Assembly: GCA_000388065.2 (NCBI GenBank)
Contig: KB932203.1
Length of the DNA: 56,984 nucleotides
Source of the DNA: Fonticula alba ATCC 38817
Lineage: Eukaryota; Protista; Nucleariida
Strand: one strand, 5' to 3'
Part shown: positions 550 through 46,499 of the stretch, piece by piece
Numbering within the stretch: the stretch's first letter is position 1
Layout of the letters: the number at the start of each line of letters is the position of its first letter
Program-made: the position numbers and the translations under genes
The notes under the pieces: generated by a model
The model's database searches: none
What the model saw: only the letters and a program-made list of their open reading frames with translations
Told to the model about the DNA's origin: nothing

Positions 550-1189
550 ATGAGCGCCGATCCCATCGCCGCGGCCGCCGCCATGGACAAGGCCCGGCGC
601 TTGTGTCGCGCCGTGGTGCACAGCCTCCTGGAGGCAGTGGTCTTGGAGCCGGCTCTCGCGCCTGCCGACCTGCACCCGGCTGTCCGGCGCTGGACCGAGC
701 CCGGCCCCCTGGCGGATCTCCTGTCGTCATTGGCACTGCAGCTCCTGCCGCCGGCCGGCTCCGGTGCCCGGAGGCAAGCTTGGCCCCTTGCCGATGAGGA
801 CCGTGTCCTGGAAGCATGCCAGCTTTTGGGGGCGCTGTTCACCTGCGCCGGGTATTCGGACATGCGTGCCGGGCTTCCCACCGCCCGGCAGCTGCTGCTC
901 CGGTGCGCGCGGCCTTCCTCGGCCACCGGCCCGGCCGCCCTGCCGCCACTGTCTGGGCTCTTTGATGTGGACGAGCTGGCCCTCGACGCGACCGGCGCCC
1001 GGGCCGGCGCGGGTCCGGCTGCCGACCCATTTGCCGCGGCCCTCGCCCGGTCTCGGCGCGACGTCAGTCACCTTAACGGATACCGGCCCCGAGACCCGGG
1101 GGCTTCTGCCCTCCCGGTCCCGGTGGCCGAGGCCCTTCTGCGCGAGTCCCTGGCCACCGCCCTGCCCAAAGCGCCCCCCTCCGCCGCCT

Positions 1190-1245
<56 letters not shown>

Positions 1246-4177
1246 CCCACCACAATCCCTGATGCCAGTGGGGAAGATACCCCGGATCCGCTGTGGATGG
1301 CACTGTCGTTGTGCCTCTCGAACTTGCTGGATCTGGTGTGCCTGCACCCGGAAGAGGCGGCCGTGCAGCCGCGCGCCATTCGCCGCGCGGCCGGCCGCGC
1401 CCTCAGCCGCTGGGTGGCCCTTGTGGTGGCCGTCTGCCCGGGGGATGGCGCTGCCCCGGCGGCCGCCCTGCGGCCCGTCCTGCCGGGGATCAGCTCGACC
1501 CTGGCGCGGCTACTGGCTCCCGGGCCGGGGGACAACCTGGCCCCCCCGGCCCCGGGCCTGGCCGGCAGCGCCCTCCTGACCTTGGGCACCGCCTGGCTGG
1601 TGAGCTTCTCCCGGGGGATTGTCCCCGATGCCGATGACCCGGCCGAGGCCCAGCAACGCGCCGCCCGGGTGGCCGACACCGTGCGTCGGCCCTTCACCAG
1701 CCCCACCCTCACCGGGGTGTTGAATGCCACCGGCCAGGGGGGCCTGGACGCGGGGGTCCTCGGCCGCCTGCCCGGCACCGGGGCGGCCCGGCCAGACACG
1801 GCGGTGGAGGTGCTCGCCTCGTCGGACGTGGGCCCGGCCGACGAGGCGACCCCCCCGGCCGATCCCCGGCCCGGCGATGGTGCCCGGCTGCCGGTTGATC
1901 CGACCCTCTCGCGGCTGATGCTCTCCCTCAGCCTGGGGCTGCTGGTACGTGTGACCGTCCTCCCTCTTCGCCTTCGCCGCGCGCCCTCCTGCGTGGGCTG
2001 TGGCCCGTGCAGATGCCCGCCGATCTGGTCTGACTCTGCCCCCCATTGGCCCCGCTCTCCCCTGCTCTTTTGTGCTTTCGCCACAGGGCACCGATCCAGC
2101 ACTGTCCAGTGCCGTGGCGGCCGATTGCGTGTTCTTCCTGTTGAGTTCCTTCGAGGCGGAGCGCCACCTGGCGCAAGCCCTCAGCCCCGCCGGCAGTGCA
2201 TACCCCCCGGACCCCACGCAGCACGGCATGGGGTCTCTCGATGTCCAGGCGGCCGGGACCCTCGATTCGGCGGCCGCACTCAGCCAACTCCGAGACCGCC
2301 TCTGGGGCGCGGTGTCCCCCTCCAATGCCGAGGACATCCTCTTCCTTCGCCCTGGTGCCGCCACCGGCGCGGCCTCCCTCTCGGCCGCGGCTTCCTCGCC
2401 GCAGGACCGCCTCCGCCAGCTGAAACTCCGGGCCCAGGGGGGAGCGCTCGTGCCGCCGGCCGCCGCTGCCGCCGGCGACCCGGCCGTCGCACCCCTTCGC
2501 ACCATGGTGGCCGGTCTGCTGGATGCCGGCCTGGCCCTTGTATTGGACTCGCGGGCGGGCCAGTTTGGCGCCGGGACCGGGGCCGGGCCCCCCGCCCCGG
2601 CCCCCGGCGACCTGGGCGTCCTCCTTCGGCGGCGCGCCGACTCCCTGGCCCTGGCCCGGCTGGTGGCCGGTGCCCTGTTGGTTTGCCCGACCGGCGGCCT
2701 GCCTGGCACCGATGGGCTCCTGGATGTGGGCCCCCGGGCGCCGGCTCTCATGGCGGCCGGCAGCATGCTGCTTGGCGAGGCGCTCCAAGCCCCGGGGGCC
2801 GAGGCGGCTCTCGGCCGGCATGGCGGCCCCCAGCCCGCCCAGGTGCCTCCCACCTGGGAGTCCGTCGGGCAGTCGCTCGGTCGGGTGGCCGGGCTCCTGC
2901 CGTCGGCCGGCCGGGCAACCCTCGCCTCGGCAGCCATCCTCGGGGCCCAAGACCCGGCCTCGGTGCGCGGTCTCATCCAAGCCGGCATGTACTTCGCCGA
3001 GGAGTGCTTGTCGGCTGGCGGCGCGACCGGCGGCGGCACGCCGGCTGGGCTCCTGCCGCTGGCCGGGTTCGGCCTCTTCGCCGGGCAGGTTCTCTGGTCG
3101 GCGGCCGGGCCTCTGCGCCTGGGCGCCCCGATGGCCATCGGCGGTGGCGACGGCCCCGCGGCCACCCTGCAGACGGTGGCCGAGTTTGCCCTTGGCCTGG
3201 TTGCGTCTGCTCTGGCGTGGGTGGGTGCCTTGGCGCCGGGGCTGACGCCGAGCACGGCGGCCCCCAGCCGCTGGGCCGTTTTTGCCCTGCTCCACCTGTG
3301 CCATACGGCCGGTAGCCTGCTGCACCTGGCCATGGGCCCGGGGCCGGCCGAGGGGGCCAGCCAAAGTGCTCCCCACCTTCGACGCCTGGTTCTCGAGCGC
3401 CTGGCCGGCCTCTGGCGCGACCAGGCCTTCCCGCTGCTGTTGCTCTCCGGCAGCCTGGCCGCGACGCCGGTGGCCGACGGGGCCCCGGCCTTCGGGCACT
3501 TGCTGCTCGGCCCCAGCCCGGGGGCCAGCCCCTCGGCGCCCGGGCCCGGGCCCGGGCCCGATGCCGATCCCCTGACGCGGGCCATCCGAACGGGGGCCAC
3601 GGATTGCATTGGGCTCTTCTCGCTGCTGTTGCTGGGGCCCCAGCCGGCCGACGGGGCGGCCGGCGTCGCCTCCTCGCTTGCCTATGGCCCCCCCTCTGGG
3701 GGTCTTGTTGGGGCCCACTCGGCCGGTGCCCTGGTGTCGGGGCTGCTGGCCCGGTCGGCCGATCAGATTTCCCATTTGGTTTGGCAGCAGCTGGGCCAGG
3801 CGTCAACGCAGGTGGCGGCGCTCTTGGCGTCCAGCGGGGCCCCGGCCGGTGCCGCCGAGGCCCCGGCTCTGGAGCGTGCCCTGGTTCAGTCGACCACCGG
3901 CGCCTGCGGGCTCCTGTCGGCCATGCTGCACCTGAACCGGCAGGTGTTTGACGCCCAGCCGGCGGGGCTCAGCCCGGGCGGCCCGCAGCGCCTGGCTGTC
4001 CTTGCCCTTTTGCGGGATTCGGTCTCGCGTCTGGTCGACGTGCTGGATGCCGCGCTCCACATTGCTCATGGTGCCGGCTCCAGCCCCGGGAATATGGTTG
4101 CCCTGCTGAGCACCTTGACATCGGGTATGCAGATGCCAGGCCTGCCGGCCTGCCGGCCATCCTCCATCTTCTTTCCA

Positions 4178-4219
<42 letters not shown>

Positions 4220-6007
4220 ATCCTCTCCTCCCGCCTCCTTTGCCATGGAAAATCCGCTGACCCTCCTGTCTGCTCCGCCATCCGCATCGTAGTTCTTCTT
4301 CAGTATGCCTGCGCCATCGAGCGCGCCTGCGAAGAGTACATTGTCATGCCACCGGCAGCGGGAGCGCCCCCCGCATTGTGCCCCTCATCCGGTGAGGGAG
4401 GTTCACTCCCCGGGCTTGAGCCGGCCTTCGCCGAGTGGCTGCGCACCCGGCGTCAGCTCGCCGCGGACCGGGGTGCCGCCGAGTCGGCCGCCACCGCTGC
4501 CACAGCTCCGGCTGGTCCCGAGCCCGAGCATCGGCCACCCCTCAGTGTGGATGATTTCTTCGCGGACCCCCCCGCCTCCGAGGGCGCCGATGAAGACCCG
4601 GCCACATGCCAGCAGTCCGACGAGGCTGCCGAGTCGGAGGACGCCCCGGTCGACGGGCTGCCCAGCTACCTGTCCTCGCATCGGCTGCTGCTTGCGCGCA
4701 TTGTCCGGCGGTACTGCCGGGTGGCCCAAGTGAGCGACCACTGGCCGGTCCGTGTGTTTGCCCTGCGCGTGGTGCGCTTCTGTCTGGGAGACCTGGCCCT
4801 CCTGCGCCACACGCCCGGGGTGCTGGCTTTCGTGCATGATGCCGTTTGGCCGGCCGTGCTGGGGTCCTTCGCGGCGCTGGATGTGGCCCTCGGCCACGGG
4901 GAGGATGTGGACGCCCTGCTGGAGAGTGCCATCGAGGGGGTGGCCTTGCTGTGTGCGCTGCTCCGCCGGCCGGGGCCCGATGGCCGGGAGGCCCTTGGCC
5001 CGGGGGCTTCTCGCCGGACCGGGGACCTGCCGCACGATTTGGCCGCCTTCCTCCGGCCGCGGATACTGGATGAGGTCCTGCGGCCGTTGGTGGTCCGGGT
5101 CCGGCGGGTGCTGCTGCCCCTGCTGGATGCCGGGTCCGAGGGGGATCGTTTCCGCGCGGCGGCCCGGCTGGCCGACCGGTGCATCCAGCTGGTGGACCTG
5201 CTCTTTGTGGCCGACGGGCCGCCCAGCGATCCGGGCACCGTGGGCGATGTGGTCGGCCTGCTGGCCATGTGCACGCACCGGACCCGGGCACCGGAGTCCC
5301 TGCGCCGCCAAGCACTGGCGACTCTGGTGGGCCGGGTGCGCCCGGGAGCCGCCGCCGGCTCGCCCGCGGCGCCCCTCTGGTCGTATCGTGAGGCCATCCG
5401 TGCGCGGTATGGCGGCCAGGGGGTCGGCGTGGTGGCCGGGCCGCGGGATCCCTGGTGGCCGGGCGCCCCCTCATCGACGGCCCAATTGTCGGGCCTGGCC
5501 CAATCCAACCCCACTTCGGTCTTCACCACCCTCCGGCTGTTGGCCCTGGCGGAGTATGTCCGGGGCGCGGCGCGGCAGACCCTGCGGGCCATGGGGCCCG
5601 AGGTGGAGCCCAGCCAGCGCCAGCTGCTTGAGCACTATGCGGCGGAGGCCCAGCCGGATGCGGCCAAGGCGGCGCGCGTGCGTTTGCTCCAGGCCGGCCC
5701 GGCGGCAACGGCCGCACGGGCCGCCGAGATGCCATCCCAAGTGGCGATGGTGTCCTCGACATGCTCCACGGCCGCTGTCCAGGCGGGGGCCCCGGCTGGT
5801 GCCGAGGCCGGGGCCCTGCTTCCGGTCGCCACGGCGGCATTCCTTCGGCCGGACCTTGCTGGGGGGGCGACCGAGTCGGCCCGTCGGGCGGCCACGCGCC
5901 TTGGCATTCAGCCGGTCCCGGTGCCGGTGCTGCCGAGCGAGCGGGCCTCGCTCTTTGCCACCGACATCGCCATTGACCAGCTGGACCTTGCGGCGTACAT
6001 CCTCTAG
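550..6007 (+). CDS. TTI1: TTI1-like HEAT-repeat protein (TTT/PIKK co-chaperone complex), about 1715 aa. Exons 550-1944, 2087-4124, 4293-6007.
   Basis: GT-AG introns at 1945-2086 (gtacgt...ccacag) and 4125-4292 (gtatgc...cgtag) join the ORFs in frame (5148 nt total). LPGISSTLARLL, VHDAVWPAVL and AFLRPRILDEVLRPL resemble the TTI1 motifs FLPGISTALTRLI, AHQAWPSLV and DFLRSRFCKDVLPKL as I recall them. Confidence 0.75.
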
Positions 6008-6202
6008 AGAGCCATGCCTTCCCTCGCGAAGGGGAGGGGGATCCAATAGATCATGCGTGCACCGACTCCGCCCGGTGTCGGGGTAGCGGGGCTGGGCCGG
6101 GTGGCGGTCCCATTTTGGCCCTCTTTTTGTCAGTACACAGGGTGCCGCCTTGGGGGTGGGAACAGCCAGTCCGGGAAGACAAGTGCACGTGCATGTGCAC
6201 AT

Positions 6203-6209
<7 letters not shown>

Positions 6210-6247
<38 letters not shown>
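6210..6247 (+). repeat. (CA)n microsatellite, representative of many others (e.g. 9364-9399, 24929-24975, 48337-48391)
   Basis: Read directly from the sequence. Confidence 0.9.
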
Positions 6248-6249
<2 letters not shown>

Positions 6250-6512
6250 CATCCATCGAAGCACGCCTCAAGGAGGCATGTATCCTTGCATGCACACATA
6301 TGCAGACACAAGGCATACAAGCACGCCGACGCGCACATGCGCTGACACGCAAATGACCGGGGAACAGTGCTGGCGGAGCAACTTGACAGGGATGCCCCCT
6401 GCGGGCACGCATGGCCGAGGGGCAGAGGATGATCTATATTGTTCGGACCGGGGATACAGGAGAAGGACGCGGAGGAACCGGGAGAGTGGGCACGGCCGAA
6501 TGGGGCGGCCCG

Positions 6513-8309
6513 TCACCGCTGGTCGGTGGTCTGACCATCGACCAAGCGGAAGGGTGTCTGAGTAAGGCAAAGAGCCGGAGGGACCTGGGCCACCCGGAGG
6601 AGGTGGGCCAGCTGGTCGGAGCCAGGAGAGGGTGTCTGGCGATGGAGCCCCGACGCCAGACGAGAGGAGGACAAGGGGAGGGGCGGTCCCCGGGGAGCCG
6701 GCTTGGGCCGCGCCCCATCGCCGAGGGCCAAGCGCCGTTGGTGCTGAAGGATGCGCCCGACGGTTCGCGGCGACACGCCCAGCATTTGGGCGATCTCCGT
6801 CCGGGACAGGGCCCCGGACAGGCTGAGCACCCGGGCGCGGAGTTCTTCGCGCGGAAGGGACGTCCGGGTGGGCGGGCTGACAACCTGCCGGCCTGGCATG
6901 AACAGCGCCAGGGTGCTGCGCACCGTGTTCAATGCCACACCCACCTGCCGGGCGATGGCCGTCGGCGTGAAGTCCGGCCTTTGGCGAGCCAATTGGACGA
7001 TGGCCTGCTGGCGGGCCGACCGCGGCCCCGGGGAGCCCCCATCGCCATAAGCCCCGGCCGGAGGTGACGCACCCGCGATCTCCCCCGGGGGAGATGCCCC
7101 CCCAGTGGGGGATATCCCGACGGGCGTCGCTGCCGCCCGGTCCAGCACACCGGTCGAGGACGCGTTGGCCGGCAACGAGTCGGCCGCTGGTGGTGCTGGA
7201 GCGGCGCGCGGCTTGCGTGGCGGTGTCAGCGCCTCGGGGACACGCGCGGCGGCCAGGCGCCGCAGGGCCGGCACCGACAGGCCAGCCTCCTGGGCAATGG
7301 CCCCGAGGGACTGCCGGTCGAGCGGCGACGCGGCCACCCGGCGCTCCAGCAGGACGAGTGCCCGATCCGCGGCCCCGGGAGCAAGGCGCTCGGCCCGGTG
7401 CCACACATGCCCCGGAATGGTGGCCTCGGCCAGGGCATACACGCTCTTCGGATCCATGCCCAGGCGCTGGGCCGCCCGGGTGACCGTGATGCCCGGCTCC
7501 TCCTGCAGGAGTTGGGCCACCTGCTCCTGCCGGCGGAGGGACCGCTGGCGCTTGGGCCAGGCATACCCCGGGCGAAGGGCCCTCACCGCCCGGGTCACTT
7601 GCTGCACCGTCAGCCCAAGCTGCGCGGCTATGGTGGCCGAGGTGGCCCCCGGGGAGGCCTCCACCAGGGCCAAGATCGCCTGATAGCGAGCCAGCGTGGC
7701 CGGGAGCAGGCGCGCCGGCTGCGGGGCCACGGTGCTCGGCTCTTCAACTGGCGGCCGCCGTGCGGCCCGCACACCCAGCAACGCCTGCGCCGACTGGGAG
7801 AGCTCAAGTCTACGGGAAGCATGCCCGTCACCGGTGGTGCCGCCATGGCCGCCATCGACACAAGCTGCCAGACCCGGTGGACCGGGCCCCAGGATCGGCC
7901 GGCCAGCCCCAGCAGCCAGGCGGCGGAGGGCCTCGGTTTCGCGAACCTGATCCGGCCGCCGAACGGTCGCCGCTGCGGCCGTGGCCGCCGCCGCCGCCAC
8001 CAGCGCCGCGTCGTCGCCCGAGGCAAGTAGCTCCAGGCGATCGGCGCCGACCGCTCGGTGGGGGATGTACAGGCGCAGCACCGACAGGCGGCTGCCCAGC
8101 CCCGTATCCTCGTCAGAGGCAGGCCCCGGGTGTGGGGAGACCGGCACCTGGGCCCCGGGATCCGGTGGCCCCGGCAGGCCGAGGCCTGGCTGTGCGAGCC
8201 CCAGCTCAGGGAGGCGAGTGGCCGCCGTTGCCGCTGCCGATAGTCGCCTCCCGGGAGATGGCCGAAGGATTCCAGCTGGACACCGAGCGACAGCGGCCCA
8301 TTGGAGCAT
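6513..8309 (-). CDS. Intronless 598-aa protein with five tandem helix-turn-helix repeats and a predicted mitochondrial presequence
   Basis: ATG at 8309 (MLQWAAVARCPAGILRPSPGRRLSAAA: Arg/Ala/Leu-rich, no acidic residues). Five HTH-like modules, e.g. RYQAILALVEASPGATSATIAAQLGLTVQQVTRAV, RQQAIVQLARQRPDFTPTAIARQVGVALNTVRSTL, LSRTEIAQMLGVSPRTVGRIL. Confidence 0.7.
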   Translation of the reverse strand: MLQWAAVARCPAGILRPSPGRRLSAAATAATRLPELGLAQPGLGLPGPPDPGAQVPVSPHPGPASDEDTGLGSRLSVLRLYIPHRAVGADRLELLASGDDAALVAAAAATAAAATVRRPDQVRETEALRRLAAGAGRPILGPGPPGLAACVDGGHGGTTGDGHASRRLELSQSAQALLGVRAARRPPVEEPSTVAPQPARLLPATLARYQAILALVEASPGATSATIAAQLGLTVQQVTRAVRALRPGYAWPKRQRSLRRQEQVAQLLQEEPGITVTRAAQRLGMDPKSVYALAEATIPGHVWHRAERLAPGAADRALVLLERRVAASPLDRQSLGAIAQEAGLSVPALRRLAAARVPEALTPPRKPRAAPAPPAADSLPANASSTGVLDRAAATPVGISPTGGASPPGEIAGASPPAGAYGDGGSPGPRSARQQAIVQLARQRPDFTPTAIARQVGVALNTVRSTLALFMPGRQVVSPPTRTSLPREELRARVLSLSGALSRTEIAQMLGVSPRTVGRILQHQRRLALGDGARPKPAPRGPPLPLSSSRLASGLHRQTPSPGSDQLAHLLRVAQVPPALCLTQTPFRLVDGQTTDQR

Positions 8310-9182: not shown

Positions 9183-9361
9183 TCAGAACCCGCCGGTGGA
9201 GCGCGCGCAGGAGGCCCTTAACTGGGCCAATTTACCAAGCAGCAGCCGAGCATGCTCCTCGTCAACCAGATCGTGGGCAAGGTACCCGGCGTCGAGGGCC
9301 AGCAGCTCGGGGCACAGCCCGGCCGGGCTGGCTGCGTCTGTGGGGCGGTCAGTGTCGGCCG

Positions 9362-9402
<41 letters not shown>

Positions 9403-12400
9403 AGGGGGGATGGCAAGAAGGAAGGTGGCCCGGCCGCACATACCGGCTACCGGTGTGGGCGGGGCATTCAACCCCCCTGGCAGGCTGTCCGCCAGGGCAA
9501 GAAGCTCCCCGTACATCAGTCCATCGGTCGCGATCCACGCCTCGAGTAGCATGAGTGTCAGCGAGAGGTGGTCCTGACCGTGCGTGTGGGTTTTTTTTTT
9601 CCGCCGTGAAGGTGCGTGAGAGTGAGGACGGAGCCAGGACGACGGTCAGAAGAACATGCGTGGGCAGGCGGGGCGGCTGGGAGCAGGACGGATGCGCACC
9701 GAGGCCCGGAAGTCCCCTGCGCCGATCAGCTTGCTGATCGAGGCCAGCAGGAGCACGCGCTGCGCCCGGGTCCGGAATAGATGGCCCAGCAGCGGGTCCA
9801 ACACACTGTCCACCGGCTGGAGGCGCGCGCTCCGGGACCTGCGAGATCCCACACAGCCTGCAGGGCGCGAGAAGGGCGGGCATGGGGCGCCGATGTCCGG
9901 GTGTCAGCGCACAGACACATAGTGGCAGGCTGTAAGGCTCCGGGGACGCACCAATGGGGAAGGAGGCGCCCTGAATGGAGCGCTGCAGGCGCCAGATCAG
10001 CGGCAGGGCCACCCGGACGGATGATGGCGCCGCCGAAGCGAGGGCCGGCAGGGACAGCAGTTCCAACGCCCGGGCCGCAATGTCCGGCCGGTGGTCGGTG
10101 AGCAGGGCCACCAGCACCGGCAGCAGCTGGAAGCCCCACGGGGGGGGAGGGGGGGGTGAGTGGATGTGAGGAGGGCACGGAGAGGCGCCGGAGCGCAGGC
10201 ATGCACTGGCCATTTCCGCGCGAAGGCGCACCTCTGTCGTCGGGAGAAGCTGGCGTGCGGCCAGGTGGTCGACAATCCAGAAGCTCATGGGACGCAGGGG
10301 CTCCGCCAGGAGGCATCCCTGGAGGGCCGGCGTGGCCAGGTGCGCAACGGCCCATGACAGGAAGAAGCTGTCCATGCACGCGTGGACCCGGGGCCGGGGC
10401 CGGGGGAGGGAGGGAGGTCAGGGGGCGGGCGGGCGGGCATATGTAAACAACCAACAAGGAACGGGCGCAAGGAAGGGAAGAGGGAAAGGCAGAGAGGCTG
10501 TTCCGCACCCGGGCTCTGCTCTCGCCGGTGTTACATGTGGCCCGTGAAGGGTGCATGGGAGTCAGGAGGAGGTGTTAAAAGCAGGAGTCGATGCCAGACG
10601 CACATGCGCGCGCCTGCATGCCCCCCCCCCCTCCTGTGCTTCACTTGCGAACGGGGTGCCTGACGTACTAGCGCCATAGTTGGCCAGGAGATCCTCGTTC
10701 GTCGGGCGCCGGGGGCCGGCCGGCGAGGCAGCCGCCGTCGCCGCCGCCGCCGCCGCCGCCTCGACCGCGCGTAAGTCATGCTCGAGAAGGTCGCGCGTGG
10801 CTCGCAGGGCAGTCAGCTGGACCCCGGCCGGCGCGGCGCCCGAGAGTGCCCGGCCGAAAAGACCCTGCAGGGCCGGATGGTTGAGGAAGCGCGGCAGACG
10901 CTCCCCCGCCAGGGCACTGGCCCGGAGGAGGGTGTCCCACAGGGTGCCGCGCGGCCCGGCGGCCAGGGCCTCGGTTTGGACCATCTCGGCCGCGGCATAT
11001 ATCACATGTACCAGCATGCCGGCCGGACTGCCGGCAAAATGCCGCGCCAGGACCGAGTCCCCCGGGAGGGCGCCGTCCGGCGCATCGGCCGGCCGGGCCA
11101 ACAGCGCCAGGATCAAAATCCCCCGGCAGGCCCGGGGTAGGTGCTCCGGTGTGAAGACACCGGCCGGGACCGGCGGCGCCGCGGCGCCCGCCGGCCGCGG
11201 GGCCGACAGAGGGCCTGCGGCAGCTGACAAACGGAGGGGACGCTGCTTCGGCGTGGTGCCCGCCGCGACCGGGGGCTGGCCGGGATCCGGGAACAGGTTG
11301 GCTACACCCGAGGCCGACATGGCGGGGTACGGGCGGGCGGGCGGGCGGACGAGCGGGCGGGCGGGCGGGCGGGCGGATAATGCATTGCCAGGTGTCAGTC
11401 ACAGGTCGGCAGGCCCGGCGCACGGGGCGGCCATCCCAAAACGTGGCCAGGGCTGGTGCGTGCCTTCACAGTAGGCCAGTAGATGCCCGACGGCTTGGGA
11501 AGAGCGCCGGCCTCGGGCCAGACTCAGCACGGCCGGCACGGCCGACGCGACGACCTGCATGCCGGAAAGCACCGGCGGCCGGGCGGTGTTGCGGGTGTCA
11601 GATCAGGACGTCACACGGGTCACAGCAGGGACAGGGCGCCAGGACCCGAGGAGAGGGGAGGGGGGGGGGGACGCACATCCGGCGGGCCGGTCACCGCGGC
11701 CACCTGCAGGGCGAGCAGGGTCTGCTCGAAGCCGGGAGGCTGGCGCAGGGCCAGCCCCGGGCTCGCCAGGCGGATGGAGTCAGCCAGGACGGCGAGGGCG
11801 TGGCCCGCGTGAGTTGGCCCGGCCGGCGCACGCAGCCGGGCCAGCAGGGTGGCCAGCATGGGCAGGCGCTGGTGCAGCAGCCCCGGGTGCGTGCGCAGCC
11901 AGGCGCCCAGGAAATGCGCCACGCCGGCCAGCGGCGGCCCGGCTGGATGCTGGCCAGGCTCCGACTTCATGCTGGCCGGGTCCGCGGGAAGCTGGCGCCA
12001 CAGCGCCTCGAAGGACGCCTCGGCCAGGAGCTCCGAGCACCGGGCCAGATGCCGGGACTGCCGGGCAGCCGGATCGTCCATGTCATCGGTCTCCCCGGCG
12101 CCGAGGGCCGCCAGGCGGCTGTCGTCATCCTCATCGCCATCCTCCTGCGCCTCCTCGCCGGCGACATCATCGGTCAGGGGGTCTGGGAGCCGCCGGGCGG
12201 TGGCCGCCGGCGGAGCACACTCGCGGCAAGTGTCGCGCCTGGCCGCGGCCCAGGGATTCAGATGCGCGCCTTCGACCGTGGCATGGCCGGTGCACCGGAC
12301 GCACGGGACGGCTGGCCCGTGCAGCACGGCCGACAGCCCGGCGTGAGCCCGGCCGAGAGCCATCATCAGGAATTGCGAGAAGGCGCCATGCAGCGACGCC

Positions 12401-15400
12401 TCGCCGGGCTGCAGGTCCAGTGTCTCGGCCGCCAGGGCCACGATCCCGGCGCACAGCTCGGCCCGAGCCGGGCCCGTGCGCATAAATGGCGCCGAGGGAA
12501 GCAGAAATCGCTCGAGCGCATCGCACGCGGCATTCTGTCGACGCGTCGGGTCAGACGGGCACAGCAGCGGGGGCAGGGCATTTGGCGTGGGCTCCGGTCT
12601 CCCCCCCCCCCTCTGCCCTCCACCCTCCAGGGCGCCGGGGGCATCAGGCAGGGGAGAGAGGGAGAGGAAGGCGGGGGGGCGGGGCGGAGGCGGACCGCGG
12701 GGCACGCACCACAACCGGCGTGCTGGGATCCAGCATCCGGCGGAGGAGTAGGGCCACCAGTCGTGCGAAGGACACATCCGACGTCGGGTGGGCCAGGAAG
12801 TCGGCCACAGCTTCGGTGGCCGCGCGTCGGACCGGCGGCGATACGTCCTGGCAGGGGGATCGGTCGCGAGAGAACCCCAGACGTCAGTGTCGCATTCATG
12901 CCTTTCAGCAGCCCCGGCAGCAGCAAGGGCCAAGGGAAGGGAAAAAAACCCAGGCGCGAGCCCGCAATGGCAAGCGTACCTGAATGCGCTCGGCCAGAAG
13001 TGCTTGAGCGGCCGCAGTGAACGTACGCCCAGCTGGGCCGGCGGCCGGGTGGCAGAGGGCAGCCGCCGCGCGCCGAACGCCGGACGACTCATCGGCCAGG
13101 GCGGCAAAGATGGCCGCCTGGATGGCACGCTGCCGGGCCAGCTCGGGATGCCGGGCCAGGCCCACAGCTAGTGCCTGGGTGGCCAGTACCCGTGGCCGGC
13201 TCGGGGCGCCGGCCTCGCCGGCGGCCAGCTGGGCCAGGCACAGAGCCGCCTGGAGCCGAAGGTCTGCCAGGAGCGGGTCGCCCTGGCTCGGGCTCAGGCC
13301 CGGGGCCGGGGCCGGGTCCAGCACCACCACGAAGGGAGACACATCGCAGGCCAGTGGCCGTGAAAGGCACAGCAGCCAGGCCCAGCACAGGGGGCTCGAG
13401 TCATCCAGGGCATTATCGGACTGGGACTGAGACGATGATGGCGGCGGCAGCACCACGGCCGAGGCATTCGGCCCGGGGGCTTGCGGGCATGATGCACACA
13501 CGGCCGGCCGGCGCCCGGCCGGCAGGGCCCGATGTAGCATGCCCACTGCCAGACTCAGCTGGAAGCGCCCGGCCGCCAGGGCCAGGAGGCTGCGCGCGTC
13601 GAAGGCCGCGGTGGTGGCCCTGGTGGCCAGGTCCCGGGCCAGTTCCAGCGTCCGCCCCGGGGTCGGCGGGGAGTCGGCCTCCGGGCTGCTGGCGGCTTGC
13701 AGCACGGCCAGGGCCACATCCACCCGCAGGGTGGCCAGCACCATGTCGGGGGTCGCCCACACGCGGCGCGCCAGATGCCCGGCCAGCGGCCCGGCCGCCG
13801 GGTAGCCCGGCTCCCGGCGCAAGACCAACAGTTCGCCGATGACGCCCGGCAGGCAGCTGCCCGGCATGACGGCAGCCGCCTCGGCCCGCCAGGGCCCCAT
13901 TTCCAGCAGGGCCCGACGCAGCAGCGGCAGGTGGTCCCCCGGATCGGAGCCCGCCCCGGCGGACAGGGCATGGCGCAGGGCCGCCGCGGCCAGGCACTCG
14001 GCAAGCATGCGCCCGGTGGCCTCCGGGCACGCCCGACGACCGGGCCGGGCTTTGGGTCCACTGGGCCGGGCCCGTGCACGCGGGTCCCCGGCATGGCCGC
14101 CCGCCCGGCCACAAAGCAGGCAGGGCCCGGCCCCGGGGGCCAGGAGCTCCGGCGTCAGCGGCCCGGCGAAGGCCAGCTGCGCCAGGTGCACCAGCAAGAA
14201 GGTCACCAGCGAGACGGCCGGCCCGGAGCCCGGGGACAGGCCCTCGCCCTGGCTGGTCGGCACGCCGGCTGGCAATGTCGGCGCCCGGTGCCGGTCCCCG
14301 GCGCCCGGGTGGCTGGCGCCCAGCGAGAAGAGCATGGCCCCCTGTAGTGCGGAGCTCAGCAACTCCCCCGGGGGGATGGTGGCCACGGTGGCGACGCTGG
14401 CCGGCCCGGGCGGCAGGGCCAGCGCCAGGCCCATGCTTGCGGCGGCCGAGCGAAGCCCCTCACGCCAGGGGCTCTGGGCCAGCCGGACGGCCCACAGCCC
14501 CAGCCGCTGGGCGGCCTGGCGCACGGCCGGCGCCAGGTCATCCGGCGAACCGCCGAGGGCGAGCTCCCGGCGCCAGGCCGCCCGTCGGACCAGGTCAAAC
14601 ACAAACCCCAAGCGCAGCTCCAGTGCCGAGCCGAAGGCGCGCAGATCGCGCATGAGGCCCCCCACCGGTCCGAGCGGGGCTCCGGCCTGGGTGGCGTCCC
14701 CCCGGCGCGAGGCCAGGGCATCGGCCGCCGCCAGGGCCTGGCAGGTGTCAGCCGCCAGGGCCAGGGCCAAGGCCACGTGCGGCGCCATGGCCGCGTCCTC
14801 TTCCGGGCCTTGGGAGCAGAGCAGCACGAAGGTGCAAATGCTCAGGCACTCCCGCAGGCAGGCCCCGGGCCCGGGGGGCGTGTCATCCCGGGGACAGGCC
14901 GACTCCTCCGGCTCCTCCAGCTCCTCGGCGTGTTCCGATTCCGTGGGCTCCAGGGCGCCGAGGGCCGCCAGGGCGGGCAGCGCGCCGGCTTCGCCCTCCA
15001 CATCGCCGAGCCGGCGGGCAAGGGCAAGCGCCTGTCGCCGCAGCGACCAGGCCAGCCGGACCAGCAGCGGTCGCCGAAGGGCCCGGTCCACCAGCGCATC
15101 GATCGGCTTCGCCCCGCCCGCCAGGGTGCTCAGCTGCGGGAAGACCACCTCCTCCAGACGCTGGATGTCGGCCCGGGAGAAGTGGTCACCGGGAGATTGC
15201 ACCAGGGCGGCGCACAGTCGCGCGAATTCCCCGGCGAAGGCTAGCCACCGGCGCATTGTCATTCCCACGGGTCAGCAAGGGGGCGTGCGTGTCGGGGCAC
15301 CGGCCGGGGCCGGCGACGGTGACAGCAGCGACAGCGAAAAAAAAAAGGCAAGAGGAAAGCGAGGCACATTGGCGCGAGCCGGGAACGCACCAACGGGTCG

Positions 15401-15589
15401 CCGGAGCAGGGCAGCTGGCAGATCCAGCGCCGCGTCGATGTGCTCCGGATGGTCGGCCAGGTCGGCAATCCGCGCGGCCGGGAGCGCCACCCCAGCGGGG
15501 GACGGGTCTTCGGGCCGGCCGGGGAGGTGGCCATCGGCCGCGGCCCCTTCCTCGGCCCGCGGCTGGTCCGGCTCCAGGGGCCGGCGCAT
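9183..15589 (-). CDS. SCC2: Cohesin loader SCC2/NIPBL homolog, about 1646 aa, 12 exons: 15589-15391, 15240-12980, 12847-12710, 12534-11677, 11554-11464, 11301-10669, 10515-10509, 10367-10232, 10126-9952, 9857-9700, 9573-9444, 9337-9183
   Basis: The spliced model is 4941 nt and stays in frame at every junction. ALADESSGVRRAAAAL, AERIQ|DVSPPVRRAA, LLPVLVALLTD and LLGHLFRTRAQR match the NIPBL HEAT segments RLMDNSTSVREAAVEL, IERILDTGISVRKRV, CVPYLIAMGTD and LYSMIRGNRQHRR in the same order. Confidence 0.85.
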
Positions 15590-16300: not shown

Positions 16301-16715
16301 NNNNNNNNNNNNNNNNNNNNNNNNNNNNNNNNNNNNNNNNNNNNNNNNNNNNNNNNNNNNNNNNNNNNNNNNNNNNNNNNNNNNNNNNNNNNNNNNNNNN
16401 NNNNNNNNNNNNNNNNNNNNNNNNNNNNNNNNNNNNNNNNNNNNNNNNNNNNNNNNNNNNNNNNNNNNNNNNNNNNNNNNNNNNNNNNNNNNNNNNNNNN
16501 NNNNNNNNNNNNNNNNNNNNNNNNNNNNNNNNNNNNNNNNNNNNNNNNNNNNNNNNNNNNNNNNNNNNNNNNNNNNNNNNNNNNNNNNNNNNNNNNNNNN
16601 NNNNNNNNNNNNNNNNNNNNNNNNNNNNNNNNNNNNNNNNNNNNNNNNNNNNNNNNNNNNNNNNNNNNNNNNNNNNNNNNNNNNNNNNNNNNNNNNNNNN
16701 NNNNNNNNNNNNNNN
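16301..16715. other. Assembly gap; the others are 23661-23865, 35174-35704, 41206-41236, 46485-46494 and 49899-49999
   Basis: Runs of N, mostly flanked by G or C homopolymers. Confidence 0.99.
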
Positions 16716-21669: not shown

Positions 21670-24398
21670 TCAGGCCGGCGGGTAAAAGTGCCCAAAGAGA
21701 ATGCACGTGGCGGCCTGGTACCCGGCGCCGAATGCCAAATACACTCTTGCCATTTGGCTATCCCGAGCGCTGGGCCCATGCATGGGGACCGGCGGGTCTT
21801 TGGGCGTCGGGTCCGCGGCCGGGGAGGGGTGCGGGTCCCCGGCCACAGGGGCAGGAGTGCTGGGGGCCTGGGCCGAGTCTTCCCCCGGTAGAAGCATGCT
21901 CGCCACCACCCAATAGGCGGCTGGGAAGGGGGCCGCAAAGCGGTGGATGATTTGCACATGGGCCGACAGCAGGATGGCCAGGTGTGCCACAAACCACAAC
22001 ATCAAATGTGGATGCAACTCAAATTGAAGGTCATGTCGCGCCAACAAGGGCACATCCACTGGACGGGAGGGGGGGGGAGGGGGGGGGGGGGCGGAGCCCG
22101 GCATGTTAGGGGCCGACCTGACAAGGCGCGGCGGAAAGGAGGAACAACTGCGATCGTCCAAAGACCCGCATGGCCACACATGGAGCGCGTACCCGGTTCC
22201 CCGGCCGGCGCCTTGGCCGCCGTCAGGAGGCCGAGCGACGCCCACCGGCGCCAAAGCGGCGGCACCACACGCCAGGCCGTGTACCCGGCCAGCAGCATGG
22301 CCGGCAGGGCCAGCACGAAGTTCGGGATTTGTCCCACCCGCCAGTACCGGAATAGCCCGACGTCCCTGGGCCCGGGGACGAGGGCTCGATGGCCCAGATG
22401 GTCAGTATGTTGCACGCATGCATGGCCGCACGGGGGCCGCCCGGCCAACGGGTGGGCGAAGGACCGGAGGCGGAATCATGTGGGCGGCCGGTGTGCCCAT
22501 ACGCACCAGTACTCCTTCTGGATGAAGCCGTAGATGAGGGGCAGGGTATTGGTGCACCAGGGTCGCGGTGTCAGACCGGCCGCCGACGCGCCAGCCACGG
22601 CTTCCGGGGTGCAGAACTCCCGATAGCCGTGGAGGGCAACCAACAGGGCGCCCGTGAGGGTGGCCACCGCGACAAAGGCACAGCGGCCCAGCTCCGCCAG
22701 CAGTGACTGAGCGCACAGCAGGTCAGTGACACGAGGATGGGGGCACATCGGGTGGCGACCGGCCGCAGGCAGGTGGCGCAGGGCGGGAGGCGCACGCACG
22801 GCGGTGGTTGGGAGGGGGGCCCCGCGAGCGGCCCAGCGATGGCGCACGGCCGACACCGCATCAAACAACGGATAGCCCACAAGCAACGTGCCGTTGGAGC
22901 GCATCAAGCAGGCCAGGAAGAAGGACATCCCACAGGGCAGTGTCCTGTATGCGTGTATATGTGTGTGTGGGGGGGGGGGGAGGGGAGGGGGGCGCATCAG
23001 CTGAGGTCTGAAAGTGACATTCCCGGAGGCAGACGGAGGGAGATCATCCGGAGGCGCACCAGCCGATCGAACGGCACCACAGCCCAGCCAAAACACACAG
23101 CCCAAACAGGGACTCGGTATACCTGCACGCAGGGGAACATGGCCACCGGGAGCTCATGGTCAATTTCGAGGGCGCCTACAAAAGGACACACACGGCAGGG
23201 GGCGAAACAAGAACAAGATGCCACGTACATTGAAGACATGAACGCCCCACCGGGGGACAGGCAGAATGCCACGCAGGCCAGGACGCCCAGCATGTCGGCC
23301 CGCCGGGGACCCAGCTTGCGAAAGGTCTGCTGGGACAGTCTGCGCTTGGGGTCAGACAGCGATGGAGCCAGGCAGGTCGCTGGATGGCGCGAGGAGGGGA
23401 GGGGGGGGGGAGAGCAAGAAAAGGGCAACAGTAGGCGGGGAAGCATGTGTTGCGCACAGGAAGAGGAAGACCGCCGCCAAGACGAAGGCCGCGTTGGACA
23501 GGATCACGCCCCACAGGGCGAGGGCCACACGGGAGGGGCGCCCATCAGGCGAAAAGAGCGCCGCTATCGGCATCGAGTGGGGGAGGGGGCGTGGAAGCAG
23601 GGGGATAAAAAAGGGCGACCGAGCGAAGGGCGCAGAGGCGTGGAAGCAGGGGGGGGGGGGNNNNNNNNNNNNNNNNNNNNNNNNNNNNNNNNNNNNNNNN
23701 NNNNNNNNNNNNNNNNNNNNNNNNNNNNNNNNNNNNNNNNNNNNNNNNNNNNNNNNNNNNNNNNNNNNNNNNNNNNNNNNNNNNNNNNNNNNNNNNNNNN
23801 NNNNNNNNNNNNNNNNNNNNNNNNNNNNNNNNNNNNNNNNNNNNNNNNNNNNNNNNNNNNNNNNNGGGGGGGGGGGGGTTATGTAGGTGCGCACGCACCC
23901 CAGCCGAAGGCGATGGCGCGGGCGGCCGCAGGCAGACCAGGGAAGAAGGCATGCTGCTGCTCGAAGGTGTGGCCCCAGTCGGCCCAGCCGCCGGGGACTG
24001 GCTCCCACCAGGCCCACCGGTCCAGAGCCGGCGTACCGGCGGCGATCGCATGCATGTGAATGGCATCCCAGCGGATGAGGGCCTCGGCCGCGCGCACATG
24101 CAGTGGGGCCCTGATGAAGCGCGTGGTCAGCCAAGAGGCAGGCCGGCGGGGCCGTCGCACCGGGCACAGTGGGGGAAAAGGCGAGGAGGGGGAGAGAGGG
24201 AGGGGGGGGGGGGGCAGCCACGCACGGGTTATCTTCGCCAGAGTTCATGCCGATGCCCAGGGCCAGGGCGGTGGATGTGTCGTCCGGGTCAAGCCGAAGC
24301 AGAAGCCGCGGCAGCACCAGCAGGCCCAGGGAGGCGATGCGGCTGCCGAGAGCCAGCAGCGCGACCCGGCGCGCGGTTGCCGCCGATCTGGAAGTCAT
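21670..24398 (-). CDS. PIGV: GPI mannosyltransferase 2 (PIG-V/Gpi18), multi-exon, spans the gap at 23661-23865
   Basis: Family motifs in order: RWDAIH, FEQQHAFFPGLP, FCLSPGGAFMSSMY, MRSNG, WCTNTLPLIYGFIQKEYW, VGLFRYWRVGQIPNFVLALP, HVQIIHRF, LFGHFYPPA*. Confidence 0.93.
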
Positions 24399-34200: not shown

Positions 34201-36265
34201 CGGGTCCACCTGGATCGAGGGCGGAGGCTCAACGCCGCCGGCAATGTATTCGAAATCGAAATGAACGGACCCGCCATCCTGCAAAGCAGTATGGATAAGG
34301 GGAGGGACGGGAGCGAGAGGGACGGGAGCGAGAGACGAAGGGGGACGACGAGACGACGAAAAGAGGACAACACACATGCAAGAGTCAGGGCTTGGATCCT
34401 CCACACAGGGACAGGAGGAGGTACATGGGAGGATACAGGCGTGAAGGGGGCGCCATGGCGTGCAGCAATGTGTGCGGGAGGCTGAAAGGGCGGACGGAGG
34501 GGGAGGGGGAGGGGGGGGGGGGGGGGCGCACCGGGAAAATGTGATCGAAATCCACCAACAGCGAGTACATGATCTCGGACGCGTGCTGTGTGCCCTTGAT
34601 GTCAAAGCCACTCATGTCGCCGCTGGGATCCTGCTCGGACTCGCTGCGGAGCAGGTTCGGTGCGAAGACCGCTGAGAGGTTGTTGGGGCCCATTTTGTTG
34701 CTGTCCTCCAGCAGAGCAACGATCCGCAGGAATTTGATCAGGAAGAGGATCAGCGTGTAGTTGCCGGGCGGCAGGTAGGTGATGATTTTGCGCAGACAAT
34801 CCAGACGGGTTGGCACGTCGGAAATCTCTGCGTGGGGCGTGTGTGGCAAATAAGGGGAGGAGGGAGAGAGAGAAAAAAAAGACGGAGCCATGTGAGTACA
34901 GGCAAGGGAGGATGTCACGAAGGGCAGACACTGGGAGGCGCACCGTTGGCTGCCATGAAGCAGTCATAAAGCTCGAAGGTGAATAGCGGCTCGGGCAACT
35001 CGCGGAGATACAGCTTCAGCAGGGAGGTCACGTCATGCGGGCTGGGGCAGATCTCCTTCAGATCGATACGGTCGCCTGGGTGGTGGAGGGCCGGCGAGGG
35101 GCAGGTATGCAGGATATGGTGAGCATCGACCACCGATGGGCGGGGCGGGGGCAGAATGCAGCCAAGGGGGGGGNNNNNNNNNNNNNNNNNNNNNNNNNNN
35201 NNNNNNNNNNNNNNNNNNNNNNNNNNNNNNNNNNNNNNNNNNNNNNNNNNNNNNNNNNNNNNNNNNNNNNNNNNNNNNNNNNNNNNNNNNNNNNNNNNNN
35301 NNNNNNNNNNNNNNNNNNNNNNNNNNNNNNNNNNNNNNNNNNNNNNNNNNNNNNNNNNNNNNNNNNNNNNNNNNNNNNNNNNNNNNNNNNNNNNNNNNNN
35401 NNNNNNNNNNNNNNNNNNNNNNNNNNNNNNNNNNNNNNNNNNNNNNNNNNNNNNNNNNNNNNNNNNNNNNNNNNNNNNNNNNNNNNNNNNNNNNNNNNNN
35501 NNNNNNNNNNNNNNNNNNNNNNNNNNNNNNNNNNNNNNNNNNNNNNNNNNNNNNNNNNNNNNNNNNNNNNNNNNNNNNNNNNNNNNNNNNNNNNNNNNNN
35601 NNNNNNNNNNNNNNNNNNNNNNNNNNNNNNNNNNNNNNNNNNNNNNNNNNNNNNNNNNNNNNNNNNNNNNNNNNNNNNNNNNNNNNNNNNNNNNNNNNNN
35701 NNNNGCATGCACCAACATACCACCACGCGATGGCCGACGCAGAGGGTCAGCGTGGTCCGGCCACCAGCCGGCCAGTGCGCATAATGCAGGGAGGAACGCA
35801 GGCGGGGGAACAGGGCTGGCAAGCGCACCGCCATCAGCGACGTCCGGGCGGCCGAAAGAGGGGGCGAGGCGCGCGTGTGTGCGTCTGCGTGTAAAGGGGG
35901 CAAGGCGAGGACTGGCACGAAGGGGAGCGGGGAAGGCGGGGAGGCGCGGGGCAAGGAGGGAGGGGAGGGGCAGTGGTGCCAGAAGGGGAGATGCTCGCAC
36001 GGGCGGGACGGCCCGTGCCGGGTGGGTCCCACCTTCTTGAAAGGGAGAGAGACGGCGAGGGGCAGAGGAAGGGGCAGAGGCAGAGGGAGAGGGAGGGATG
36101 GGCAGCGCCGAGGCGCTGCTCTGCCTCGCCCCCCCCCCCCCCCCCCAGCATCGGTATGGGGCCTCCAGGGAAGGCTGGGCACCCAGTCCGGGGAGTTCGC
36201 TCTCCCCGGGGACCGGAGGGGAAGCGTGCGCTCGTTTGCCCGCGCACCTGGGGCGGGCCGGCCCC

Positions 36266-46484: not shown

Positions 46485-46499
46485 NNNNNNNNNNCCCCC
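46415..46499 (+). repeat. C homopolymer of at least 70 nt interrupted by a 10-N gap
   Basis: Read directly from the sequence. Confidence 0.85.

What the first reader, a model, noticed from the sequence alone, without database searches (positions are those of the whole stretch)
6513..8309. Intronless, probably mitochondrial protein built from five bacterial-style HTH repeats
Seen: a presequence-like N-terminus, then five modules between about 7688 and 6745 with the consensus R..I..L....P..T.T.IA..LG.....V...L. Modules 1, 2 and 4 are followed by a PG-x-x-(W/V) tail (LRPGYAW, TIPGHVW, FMPGRQV). They form a 3+2 arrangement split by a low-complexity linker. There is no sigma region 2, transposase catalytic core or ligand-binding domain, and the gene has no intron although every neighbour does. 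Inference: a modular organellar DNA/RNA-binding repeat protein (nucleoid, transcription or RNA maturation factor, analogous in role to mTERF/PPR) made from HTH units, possibly acquired horizontally or derived from a mobile element. I know of no described family with this architecture.
Basis: partly seen in the sequence, partly recalled or inferred. Interest (0 to 1): 0.75.

Follow-up and report, generated by a model that had tools for sequence, protein, structure and literature searches.

The report
Five-module helix-turn-helix array protein, Fonticula
This intron-free gene of the amoeba Fonticula alba encodes a very basic protein carrying four clear and one worn copy of the classic DNA-gripping helix-turn-helix module in a 3+2 layout; the modules are real, but its proposed work inside mitochondria is still only a guess.

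Summary
The window is Fonticula alba scaffold KB932203.1. The minus-strand ORF 8309-6513 is identical to the annotated single-exon 598-aa gene. There are five ~50-aa modules. Four reach Pfam HTH_23/HTH_24 significance and M3 is degenerate. They lie 3+2 around a 72-aa low-complexity linker, with PG-x-x-W/V tails after M1, M2 and M4. AlphaFold models built with array alignments give five three-helix bundles. M1, M2, M4 and M5 superpose on classic HTH/winged-HTH DNA-binding domains. There is no transposase core, no sigma region 2, no terminal inverted repeats and no second copy in the window. Codon composition is native.

An exhaustive phmmer search of 1.84 billion proteins found only 15 weak relatives. 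All are tandem-HTH arrays from phage-like or haloarchaeon-like metagenome contigs, so the architecture exists elsewhere but is uncharacterised.

This scan had already reported a Fonticula-only tandem-HTH family of roughly 15 to 30 genes on other DNA. My searches retrieved none of those paralogs, so membership is plausible but unverified.

The leader is presequence-like (5 Arg, no acidic residue in 34 aa, an RRL|SA site). Localisation and the binding target are untested.

Best reading: a modular, probably DNA-binding, multi-HTH protein whose compartment is unresolved.

The parts
6513..8309 (-). Complete single-exon coding sequence, 598 aa plus stop. It starts at the first in-frame ATG.
   Evidence: identical to the annotated gene. 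There is no in-frame ATG upstream in the open frame.
8208..8309 (-). Residues 1-34, a presequence-like leader: 5 Arg, no Asp/Glu, 9 Ala, and an RRL|SA R-3-type site at 21-24.
   Evidence: GC3 of the first 40 codons is only 0.57.
7704..8207 (-). Residues 35-202, a P/G/A-rich N-terminal region with no recognisable domain.
   Evidence: no Pfam family. (no relative matched this part).
7557..7703 (-). Module M1 (residues 203-251), an HTH with the LRPGYAW tail.
   Evidence: HTH_24 E 4.3e-5 and HTH_23 E 1.2e-4. 32.5 bits against the independent array HMM. Three helices with pLDDT above 90.
7401..7550 (-). Module M2 (residues 254-303), an HTH with the TIPGHVW tail.
   Evidence: HTH_23 E 1.2e-4. VIA matches to DeoR, FapR, ROK and Lrp HTH domains, Z 6.4-7.4.
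7239..7379 (-). Module M3 (residues 311-357), a degenerate helical module.
   Evidence: No Pfam HTH hit. 1.8 bits against the independent HMM. 9.6 bits against its sister modules versus a shuffle maximum of 7.8. Helical, pLDDT 75-87. Its best structural matches are the NuoE N-terminal bundle and a homeodomain.
7023..7238 (-). Low-complexity linker (residues 358-429) between the 3-module and 2-module blocks.
   Evidence: pI 6.2, no family, weaker codon signal.
6882..7022 (-). Module M4 (residues 430-476), an HTH with the FMPGRQV tail.
   Evidence: HTH_23 E 3e-5. 43.9 bits against the independent array HMM. pLDDT above 90.
6720..6860 (-). Module M5 (residues 484-530), the best-preserved HTH.
   Evidence: HTH_23 E 5.4e-8. 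IS630 N-terminus E 3.6e-8. LsrR HTH Z 7.3, rmsd 1.5 A over 47 aa.
6516..6719 (-). C-terminal tail (residues 531-598) with no recognisable domain.
   Evidence: no family. GC3 0.72-0.78.

Best explanation
This is a real, native, intron-free Fonticula alba gene for a strongly basic (pI 11.5) nucleic-acid-binding protein. Its working parts are four canonical tri-helical HTH modules and one degenerate one. They are winged-HTH units that have lost most of the wing. The PG-x-x-W/V tail sits where winged HTHs carry the glycine and hydrophobic residues that begin the first wing strand.

The modules form a block of three and a block of two, joined by a flexible 72-aa linker. I infer that each module places its third helix in a DNA groove. 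The two blocks would then read two composite sites, or one long one, in the manner of Myb repeats, the paired domain or the bipartite DNA-binding domains of Tc1/mariner transposases.

Shown: the gene model, the modules, their predicted fold, the charge, and the absence of any enzymatic domain. Inferred: double-stranded DNA as the ligand and modular site reading. Open: the compartment (mitochondrion about 40%, nucleus about 50%), expression, and whether the gene is a far-diverged member of the Fonticula tandem-HTH family reported earlier by this scan.
For: The gene is identical to the annotated single-exon model.

Pfam HTH_23 scores 69.9 bits in 4 stretches and HTH_24 scores 52.2 bits.

An array HMM built from 97 modules of other proteins, without this one, scores the protein at 99.1 bits, E 4e-33.

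Internal repeats beat the shuffles.

AlphaFold gives mean pLDDT 83.5 for M4-M5 and 84.7 for M1-M3, all as three-helix bundles with flexible joints.

In VIA-align, all 50 listed rows for M4-M5 are small helical domains and nearly all are HTH or winged-HTH DNA-binding domains. The best are LsrR (Z 7.3, 1.5 A over 47 aa), the G20C small terminase, Tn3 resolvase (34% identity), sigma region 4, Lrp and IclR. M1 and M2 behave likewise.

Net charge is +10 on the first block and +12 on the second.

GC3 is 0.80-0.93 in the modules, equal to the neighbours' 0.82-0.85.

P0015 and P0003 show the full or partial wing at the position of the PG tail.
Against: There is no ortholog, so purifying selection could not be measured.

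Foldseek gave no PDB match at E <= 1e-3 for the multi-module models. VIA Z scores of 6-7 are in the range the tool calls common for small helical domains.

The alignments given to AlphaFold were made of other HTH arrays, which biases the models towards an HTH.

M3 has almost no independent support. The N-terminal 200 residues, the linker and the tail show a weaker codon signal.

Tandem winged helices can bind RNA, as in SelB, which appears among the weak structural matches.
Confidence: 0.7

Rival explanations
1. One reading: the protein is imported into mitochondria. There it would act as a modular sequence-specific factor on mtDNA or mitochondrial RNA (nucleoid, transcription or RNA maturation), an HTH-based counterpart of mTERF/PPR proteins.
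For: The first 34 residues have 5 Arg, no acidic residue, 9 Ala and 4 Ser/Thr. They include an RRL|SA site and a stretch (18-35) with a moderate helical hydrophobic moment of 0.45. The two annotated neighbours have 7 and 4 acidic residues in the same span. Earlier scan notes report similar leaders on other Fonticula HTH arrays; these are unchecked leads.
Against: No targeting predictor, proteome or localisation data were available. Given this protein's own composition (6.9% Asp+Glu), an acid-free 34-aa stretch has a chance of about 0.09. Two other regions of the protein meet the same criterion. Prolines at 11, 17 and 19 break the first half of the leader. The first 40 codons have an atypically low GC3 of 0.57. 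Basic clusters such as PKRQR (251-255) and PRKPR (364-368) could equally serve nuclear import. No paper links Fonticula mtDNA to an unusual need for such factors.
Confidence: 0.3
2. It is a domesticated or decaying remnant of a transposase DNA-binding region (IS630/Tc1-mariner or ISL3 type) whose HTH units were duplicated.
For: M5 matches the first 55 positions of the IS630 transposase model (E 3.6e-8) and IS21 (E 2.5e-7). HTH_Tnp_ISL3 scores 53 bits in 4 stretches. Mos1, SETMAR and paired-domain structures are among the weak fold matches. The gene has no intron.
Against: There is no DDE or other catalytic domain in the protein. There is no room for one in the 506-bp and 870-bp flanks. There are no terminal inverted repeats, only CA/TG microsatellites. 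There is no second copy in the window. The transposase scores are far below the family cut-offs (33 against 100 bits). M1 and M4 match HTH_24-type array modules better than transposase models.
Confidence: 0.12
3. It was acquired recently by horizontal transfer from a bacterium or phage that carries a tandem-HTH array. Fonticula eats bacteria.
For: The only relatives found are arrays on phage-like and prokaryote-like metagenome contigs. Two-module stretches match phage families phrog_664 (E 1.7e-9) and phrog_14131. The gene has no intron.
Against: The best hit is only 27% identical at E 1e-9. Different modules prefer different donor groups. The five modules do not form a clade, unlike those of most prokaryotic arrays. 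Codon-position GC is indistinguishable from the neighbours. The gene sits on a 3.6-Mb scaffold between intron-bearing eukaryotic genes. An ancient transfer cannot be excluded.
Confidence: 0.07
4. It is a decaying or non-functional gene copy. The HTH region is a fossil, and the long low-complexity parts are chance open frame in a DNA stretch of about 70% GC.
For: M3 is degenerate. The N-terminus, linker and tail have a weaker codon signal. Long chance ORFs overlap on both strands here. There are no close relatives. Expression is untested.
Against: The frame is intact for 598 codons. Four modules still score as HTH with strong third-position GC (0.80-0.93). All five are predicted to fold confidently.
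Confidence: 0.08

Closest known systems
Pfam HTH clan domains HTH_23 (PF13384) and HTH_24 (PF13412, winged HTH of the AsnC/Lrp/MarR type)
   Same: Each of M1, M2, M4 and M5 matches these profiles. Each is predicted as a three-helix bundle that superposes on LsrR/SorC, DeoR, Lrp, IclR and sigma region 4 domains.
   Different: There are five units in one chain with no effector, oligomerisation or catalytic domain. The wing is reduced to a PG-x-x-W/V stub.
Uncharacterised tandem HTH_24 arrays of phages, bacteria and haloarchaea (P0002-P0015; PHROG 664, 14131, 323 'DNA binding protein')
   Same: They share the head-to-tail HTH architecture, a period of roughly 50-70 aa and the same module consensus (I..L....P..T..EIA..LG.....V). 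P0011 even carries HPG tails.
   Different: They are only 27-40% identical over short stretches. Their modules are near-identical recent amplifications that form one clade per protein, whereas the Fonticula modules are highly diverged from each other. They have no eukaryotic leader and no long disordered regions. Their function is unknown too.
Eukaryotic multi-HTH DNA-binding domains: Myb R1R2R3, Pipsqueak (four Psq repeats), Pax paired domain, CENP-B N-terminus, and the Tc1/mariner bipartite domain
   Same: Several tri-helical HTH units are joined by short linkers and read adjacent DNA segments. CENP-B_N matches M5 at 21.9 bits, and Mos1, Pax, DUX4, Myb and Reb1 appear among the weak fold matches.
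   Different: Only M5 reaches the cut-off of one of those families (CENP-B_N, 21.9 against 21.2 bits), and no Myb, Psq or PAX profile is matched. The units here are of the prokaryotic HTH_23/24 type. That Pipsqueak and Myb work this way is from my own knowledge and was not tested here.
Fonticula tandem-HTH array family reported earlier by this scan (e.g. s1-065573, s1-065717, s1-065535)
   Same: Same species, no intron, basic, tandem HTH modules behind a presequence-like leader, as those notes describe.
   Different: This protein has only five modules split 3+2, with about half its length disordered. No Fonticula paralog was retrieved by an exhaustive phmmer search or by three word searches. 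Direct comparison was impossible because no tool could fetch those paralogs.
mTERF / PPR / OPR organellar repeat proteins
   Same: Only the proposed role: a modular nucleic-acid reader imported into an organelle.
   Different: The fold is different (two-helix solenoid repeats against tri-helical HTH). No profile match was found.

Membership tests
Tri-helical HTH / winged-HTH DNA-binding domain (Pfam clan HTH) | Profile match above the curated cut-off | tested here: met
   For the whole protein, HTH_23 scores 69.9 bits against a cut-off of 24.6 and HTH_24 scores 52.2 against 21.9. Alone, M5 scores 32.9 and M1 scores 23.4 (HTH_24). M4 (24.1) and M2 (22.2) fall just under the cut-off, and M3 has no hit.
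Tri-helical HTH / winged-HTH DNA-binding domain (Pfam clan HTH) | Three-helix bundle with a tight turn between helices 2 and 3 that superposes on solved HTH domains | tested here: met
   The AF2 models have pLDDT 83.5 and 84.7. VIA gives Z 6-7.4 and rmsd 1.5-3 A over 45-56 aa to LsrR, DeoR, Lrp, sigma r4 and resolvase for M1, M2, M4 and M5. M3 is inconclusive. Caveat: the alignments were made of other HTH arrays.
IS630/Tc1-mariner or ISL3 transposase | DDE catalytic domain and terminal inverted repeats | tested here: not met
   Only the N-terminal HTH part of the model is matched, at 33 bits against a cut-off of 100. No catalytic family appears in Pfam. There are no TIRs.
Sigma-70 family factor | Region 2 (core binding, -10 recognition) together with region 4 | tested here: not met
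   Only region 3/4-like HTH matches occur, at 25-31 bits. No region 2 match was found, and residues 1-200 hit no family.
Fonticula tandem-HTH array family (earlier scan notes) | Detectable sequence relationship to other Fonticula members | tested here: inconclusive
   phmmer against 1.84e9 representatives returned no Fonticula paralog at E <= 1e-3. The word searches returned only the query itself. The members could not be fetched for a direct or profile comparison. HMMER's composition filters may hide relatives that are equally Ala/Arg-rich.
Fonticula tandem-HTH array family (earlier scan notes) | Architecture: no intron, basic, head-to-tail HTH modules, presequence-like leader | tested here: met
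   The comparison is with the notes' descriptions only.
Mitochondrial matrix-targeted protein | N-terminal presequence: Arg-rich, acid-free, amphipathic, with an MPP R-2/R-3 site | tested here: inconclusive
   The composition and an RRL|SA site fit. But two internal stretches fit the same composition test. There are three prolines in the first 19 residues. No trained predictor was available.
Mitochondrial matrix-targeted protein | Demonstrated localisation | not testable with these tools
   Needs imaging or organelle proteomics.
mTERF / PPR / OPR | Match to the family repeat profile | tested here: not met
   No such family is listed for the whole protein or for any segment.

The most novel reading that the evidence does not exclude
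The gene is a divergent member of a Fonticula-specific family of HTH-array proteins that are imported into mitochondria. There, successive modules with different recognition helices would read successive short stretches of mtDNA or RNA. That would be an independent, HTH-based invention of the modular organellar reader otherwise known from PPR, OPR and mTERF proteins.
Probability: 0.2. Interest if true: 0.8.

Novelty: new variant of a known kind. Interest (0 to 1): 0.5.

Why it matters
Tandem arrays of prokaryote-type HTH modules with no other domain are not a described class of eukaryotic protein. The searches here show the same architecture in phage-like and archaeal-like sequences, also uncharacterised. 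If the Fonticula proteins read nucleic acid module by module, they would be a new modular recognition scaffold. If they do so inside mitochondria, they would be a new solution to organellar gene control in a lineage at the base of the fungal branch. On present evidence this gene is a well-supported multi-HTH binding protein with unknown target and compartment.

Tried and rejected
1. Word-index protein searches with the whole protein, residues 198-535 and residues 200-306 returned only the query itself. The first two were swamped by low-complexity words.

2. The exhaustive phmmer search found no Fonticula paralog. The earlier-reported family could therefore not be fetched or compared, and no tool reaches other parts of this genome.

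Expression, transcript ends and the absence of an intron at RNA level remain untested.

4. A sequence search of the PDB gave only SigF region 4 at E 0.15.

5. Foldseek against the PDB gave nothing at E <= 1e-3 for either multi-module model, because the joints are flexible. The ESM Atlas shape search gave TM <= 0.51. The Atlas feature search scored at most 0.85, which is a lead only.

6. Scanning all six frames of the window with a module HMM found no further copy and no extra module in residues 1-200.

7. I looked for an in-frame intron in the linker and found no convincing donor/acceptor pair.

8. I looked for terminal inverted repeats and found only CA/TG microsatellites.

10. Literature searches found no description of this family and no unusual Fonticula mitochondrial genome.

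11. The search of earlier findings by sequence was blank.
Full report
**Source and gene model.** The 598-aa product of the minus-strand ORF 8309-6513 is letter-for-letter a predicted protein already in the public collection. Its gene is called as a single exon on scaffold KB932203.1 of assembly GCA_000388065.2. A preprint names that assembly as Fonticula alba (taxonomy). The frame stays open upstream to 8738, but that stretch has no in-frame ATG. It is pyrimidine-rich with a non-coding codon-position pattern. So 8309 is the first possible ATG start. The two complete neighbouring gene models span 6407 nt for 1646 aa and 5458 nt for 1715 aa and must therefore contain introns. This gene has none. 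I found no convincing in-frame intron in the linker.

**The observation.** Five modules of about 50 residues are present: M1 203-251, M2 254-303, M3 311-357, M4 430-476 and M5 484-530. Pfam HTH_23 scores the protein at 69.9 bits (E 1.3e-19, four stretches) and HTH_24 at 52.2 bits. Scanned alone, M1, M2, M4 and M5 each hit HTH_23 or HTH_24 at E 1e-4 to 5e-8. M3, the 72-aa linker, residues 1-200 and the C-terminal tail hit nothing relevant. In a leave-one-out test each module scores above all 500 shuffles of itself against an HMM of the other four. M3 passes only narrowly, at 9.6 bits against a maximum of 7.8.

**Fold.** I located the modules in the 15 relatives with an iterated HMM. I then cut two- and three-module segments in register and aligned them to M4-M5 and M1-M3. 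AlphaFold2 gave mean pLDDT 83.5 and 84.7. Each module is a three-helix bundle, mostly above 90 (M3 75-87), and the joints between modules have low confidence.
- Foldseek found nothing significant for these flexible multi-domain models. Its lists are nevertheless dominated by multi-HTH DNA binders: Mos1, Pax, DUX4, Myb, SelB and sigma factors.
- VIA-align, which can match one domain at a time, placed M4, M5, M1 and M2 on classic HTH or winged-HTH domains. Examples are LsrR (Z 7.3, 1.5 A over 47 aa, 26% identity), the G20C small terminase, Tn3 resolvase (34% identity), DeoR, Lrp/AsnC, IclR and sigma region 4.
- M3 matched the NuoE N-terminal bundle and a homeodomain about equally, so it is inconclusive.
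- Caveats: Z of 6-7 is within the range the tool calls common for small helical domains, and the alignments themselves consisted of HTH arrays.

**The PG tail.** In the relatives, the position after helix 3 carries the start of a wing. P0015 has a 72-aa period with a complete beta-hairpin after "K-x-x-G-R-V". P0003 has a shortened one. P0011 has "HPG". I therefore read PG-x-x-W/V as the stub of the first wing strand of an HTH_24-type winged helix. This is an inference from alignment, not a tested structure.

**What it is not.**
- There is no DDE or other catalytic domain, no sigma region 2 and no ligand-binding domain. The IS630 and IS21 matches cover only the N-terminal HTH of those models, at a third of the cut-off.
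- The flanks (506 bp and about 870 bp) have no room for a catalytic domain.
- There are no terminal inverted repeats, only CA/TG microsatellites.
- There is no second copy in the window.
- GC3 of the HTH region (0.84; 0.80-0.93 per 40 codons) equals that of neighbouring genes (0.82-0.85). The gene is therefore compositionally native.

**Relatives.** Three word-index searches returned only the query. The exhaustive phmmer search of 1.84 billion representatives gave 15 hits at E 1e-9 to 4e-4, all with several matched stretches. All but the last (P0016, 112 aa, a single module) are head-to-tail HTH arrays.
- Several are Lys-rich proteins. Two of these sit on phage-like contigs where all genes run on one strand. 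P0011 lies on a 337-kb contig with TnpB-like genes, and P0002 on a 43.6-kb contig.
- Another group is very acidic and haloarchaeon-like.
- They are HTH_24-type, and P0002 belongs to phrog_14131.
- Two-module stretches of the Fonticula protein align colinearly to phrog_664 (E 1.7e-9) and phrog_14131.
- An HMM of 97 of their modules, built without the Fonticula protein, scores it at 99 bits.
- In a module tree, the modules of most of these arrays form one clade per protein or per close group (P0002 and P0007 do not). The five Fonticula modules are scattered on long branches (55 columns, weak resolution).

The architecture therefore exists outside Fonticula but is uncharacterised. This copy is an old or fast-evolving, heterogeneous array rather than a recent amplification or a recent transfer.

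**Relation to earlier scan findings.** This scan has already reported, on other DNA of the same genome, a Fonticula-only family of roughly 15 to 30 intron-free tandem-HTH array genes with presequence-like leaders. Those are unchecked notes. This gene fits their description in architecture. However, none of those paralogs appeared in my exhaustive search, and I had no means of fetching them. HMMER's composition filters may suppress equally Ala/Arg-rich relatives. Membership is therefore plausible, about two in three by my estimate, but unverified. If it is a member, it is a very divergent one. My result adds that distant look-alikes do exist in phage-like and archaeal-like sequences.

**Localisation.** The first 34 residues hold 5 Arg, no acidic residue, 9 Ala and 4 Ser/Thr, with an RRL|SA site at 21-24 and a moderately amphipathic stretch at 18-35. 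The two neighbouring genes have 7 and 4 acidic residues in the same span. Against that, the whole protein is poor in acidic residues. Two internal regions pass the same test. Three prolines interrupt the first 19 residues. The first 40 codons have an atypically low GC3. Basic clusters that could act as nuclear signals exist. I rate mitochondrial import at about 40% and leave it open.

**Mechanism.** Two strongly basic blocks (+10 and +12) of three and two HTH modules are joined by a flexible, near-neutral linker. M1, M2, M4 and M5 begin helix 3 with polar or basic pairs (QQ, KS, NT, RT), as base-reading HTHs do. M3 does not. This fits a protein that reads two composite DNA sites, or one long one, module by module, with M3 acting as a spacer. 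Binding to RNA cannot be excluded. SelB's tandem winged helices bind RNA and appear among the weak matches.

**Limits.** Expression and transcript structure are therefore untested here.

Noticed in passing
window 16301-16715, 23661-23865, 35174-35704, 41206-41236, 46485-46494, 49899-49999: These are runs of N, i.e. assembly gaps. They explain the apparent low-GC windows in the composition profile. They are not AT-rich islands.
   Followed up: yes
window 6198-6250 and 9364-9400: A (CA)n and a (TG)n microsatellite flank the gene in opposite orientation and show up as a 37-39-nt inverted repeat. They are simple repeats, not transposon ends.
   Followed up: yes
window 550-6007 (+) and 9183-15589 (-): The two large neighbouring gene models (1715 aa and 1646 aa) have no Pfam family on record. 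They are large unexplained proteins.
   Followed up: no
L002:1-16834 (ENA contig ctg834231, 337 kb): A jumbo-phage-like contig with all genes on one strand. It carries two TnpB/Cas12f-like genes, a PcfJ-like gene and a five-module HTH array with HPG tails (P0011) next to a faint protein-kinase hit.
   Followed up: partly
P0006, P0008, P0009, P0010, P0013 (metagenome proteins): A group of very acidic, haloarchaeon-like proteins made of 4-8 near-identical HTH_24 modules ('ILE.A..NP..TNAEIA..VGARV.LVRDT'). P0006 ends in a hydrophobic, membrane-anchor-like tail. Their function is unknown.
   Followed up: partly
P0001 residues 165-185 (window about 7755-7817): The stretch 'SRRLELSQSAQALLGVRAARR' loosely resembles the helix 2-turn-helix 3 core of the modules and might be the remnant of a sixth module. 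No HMM detected it.
   Followed up: partly
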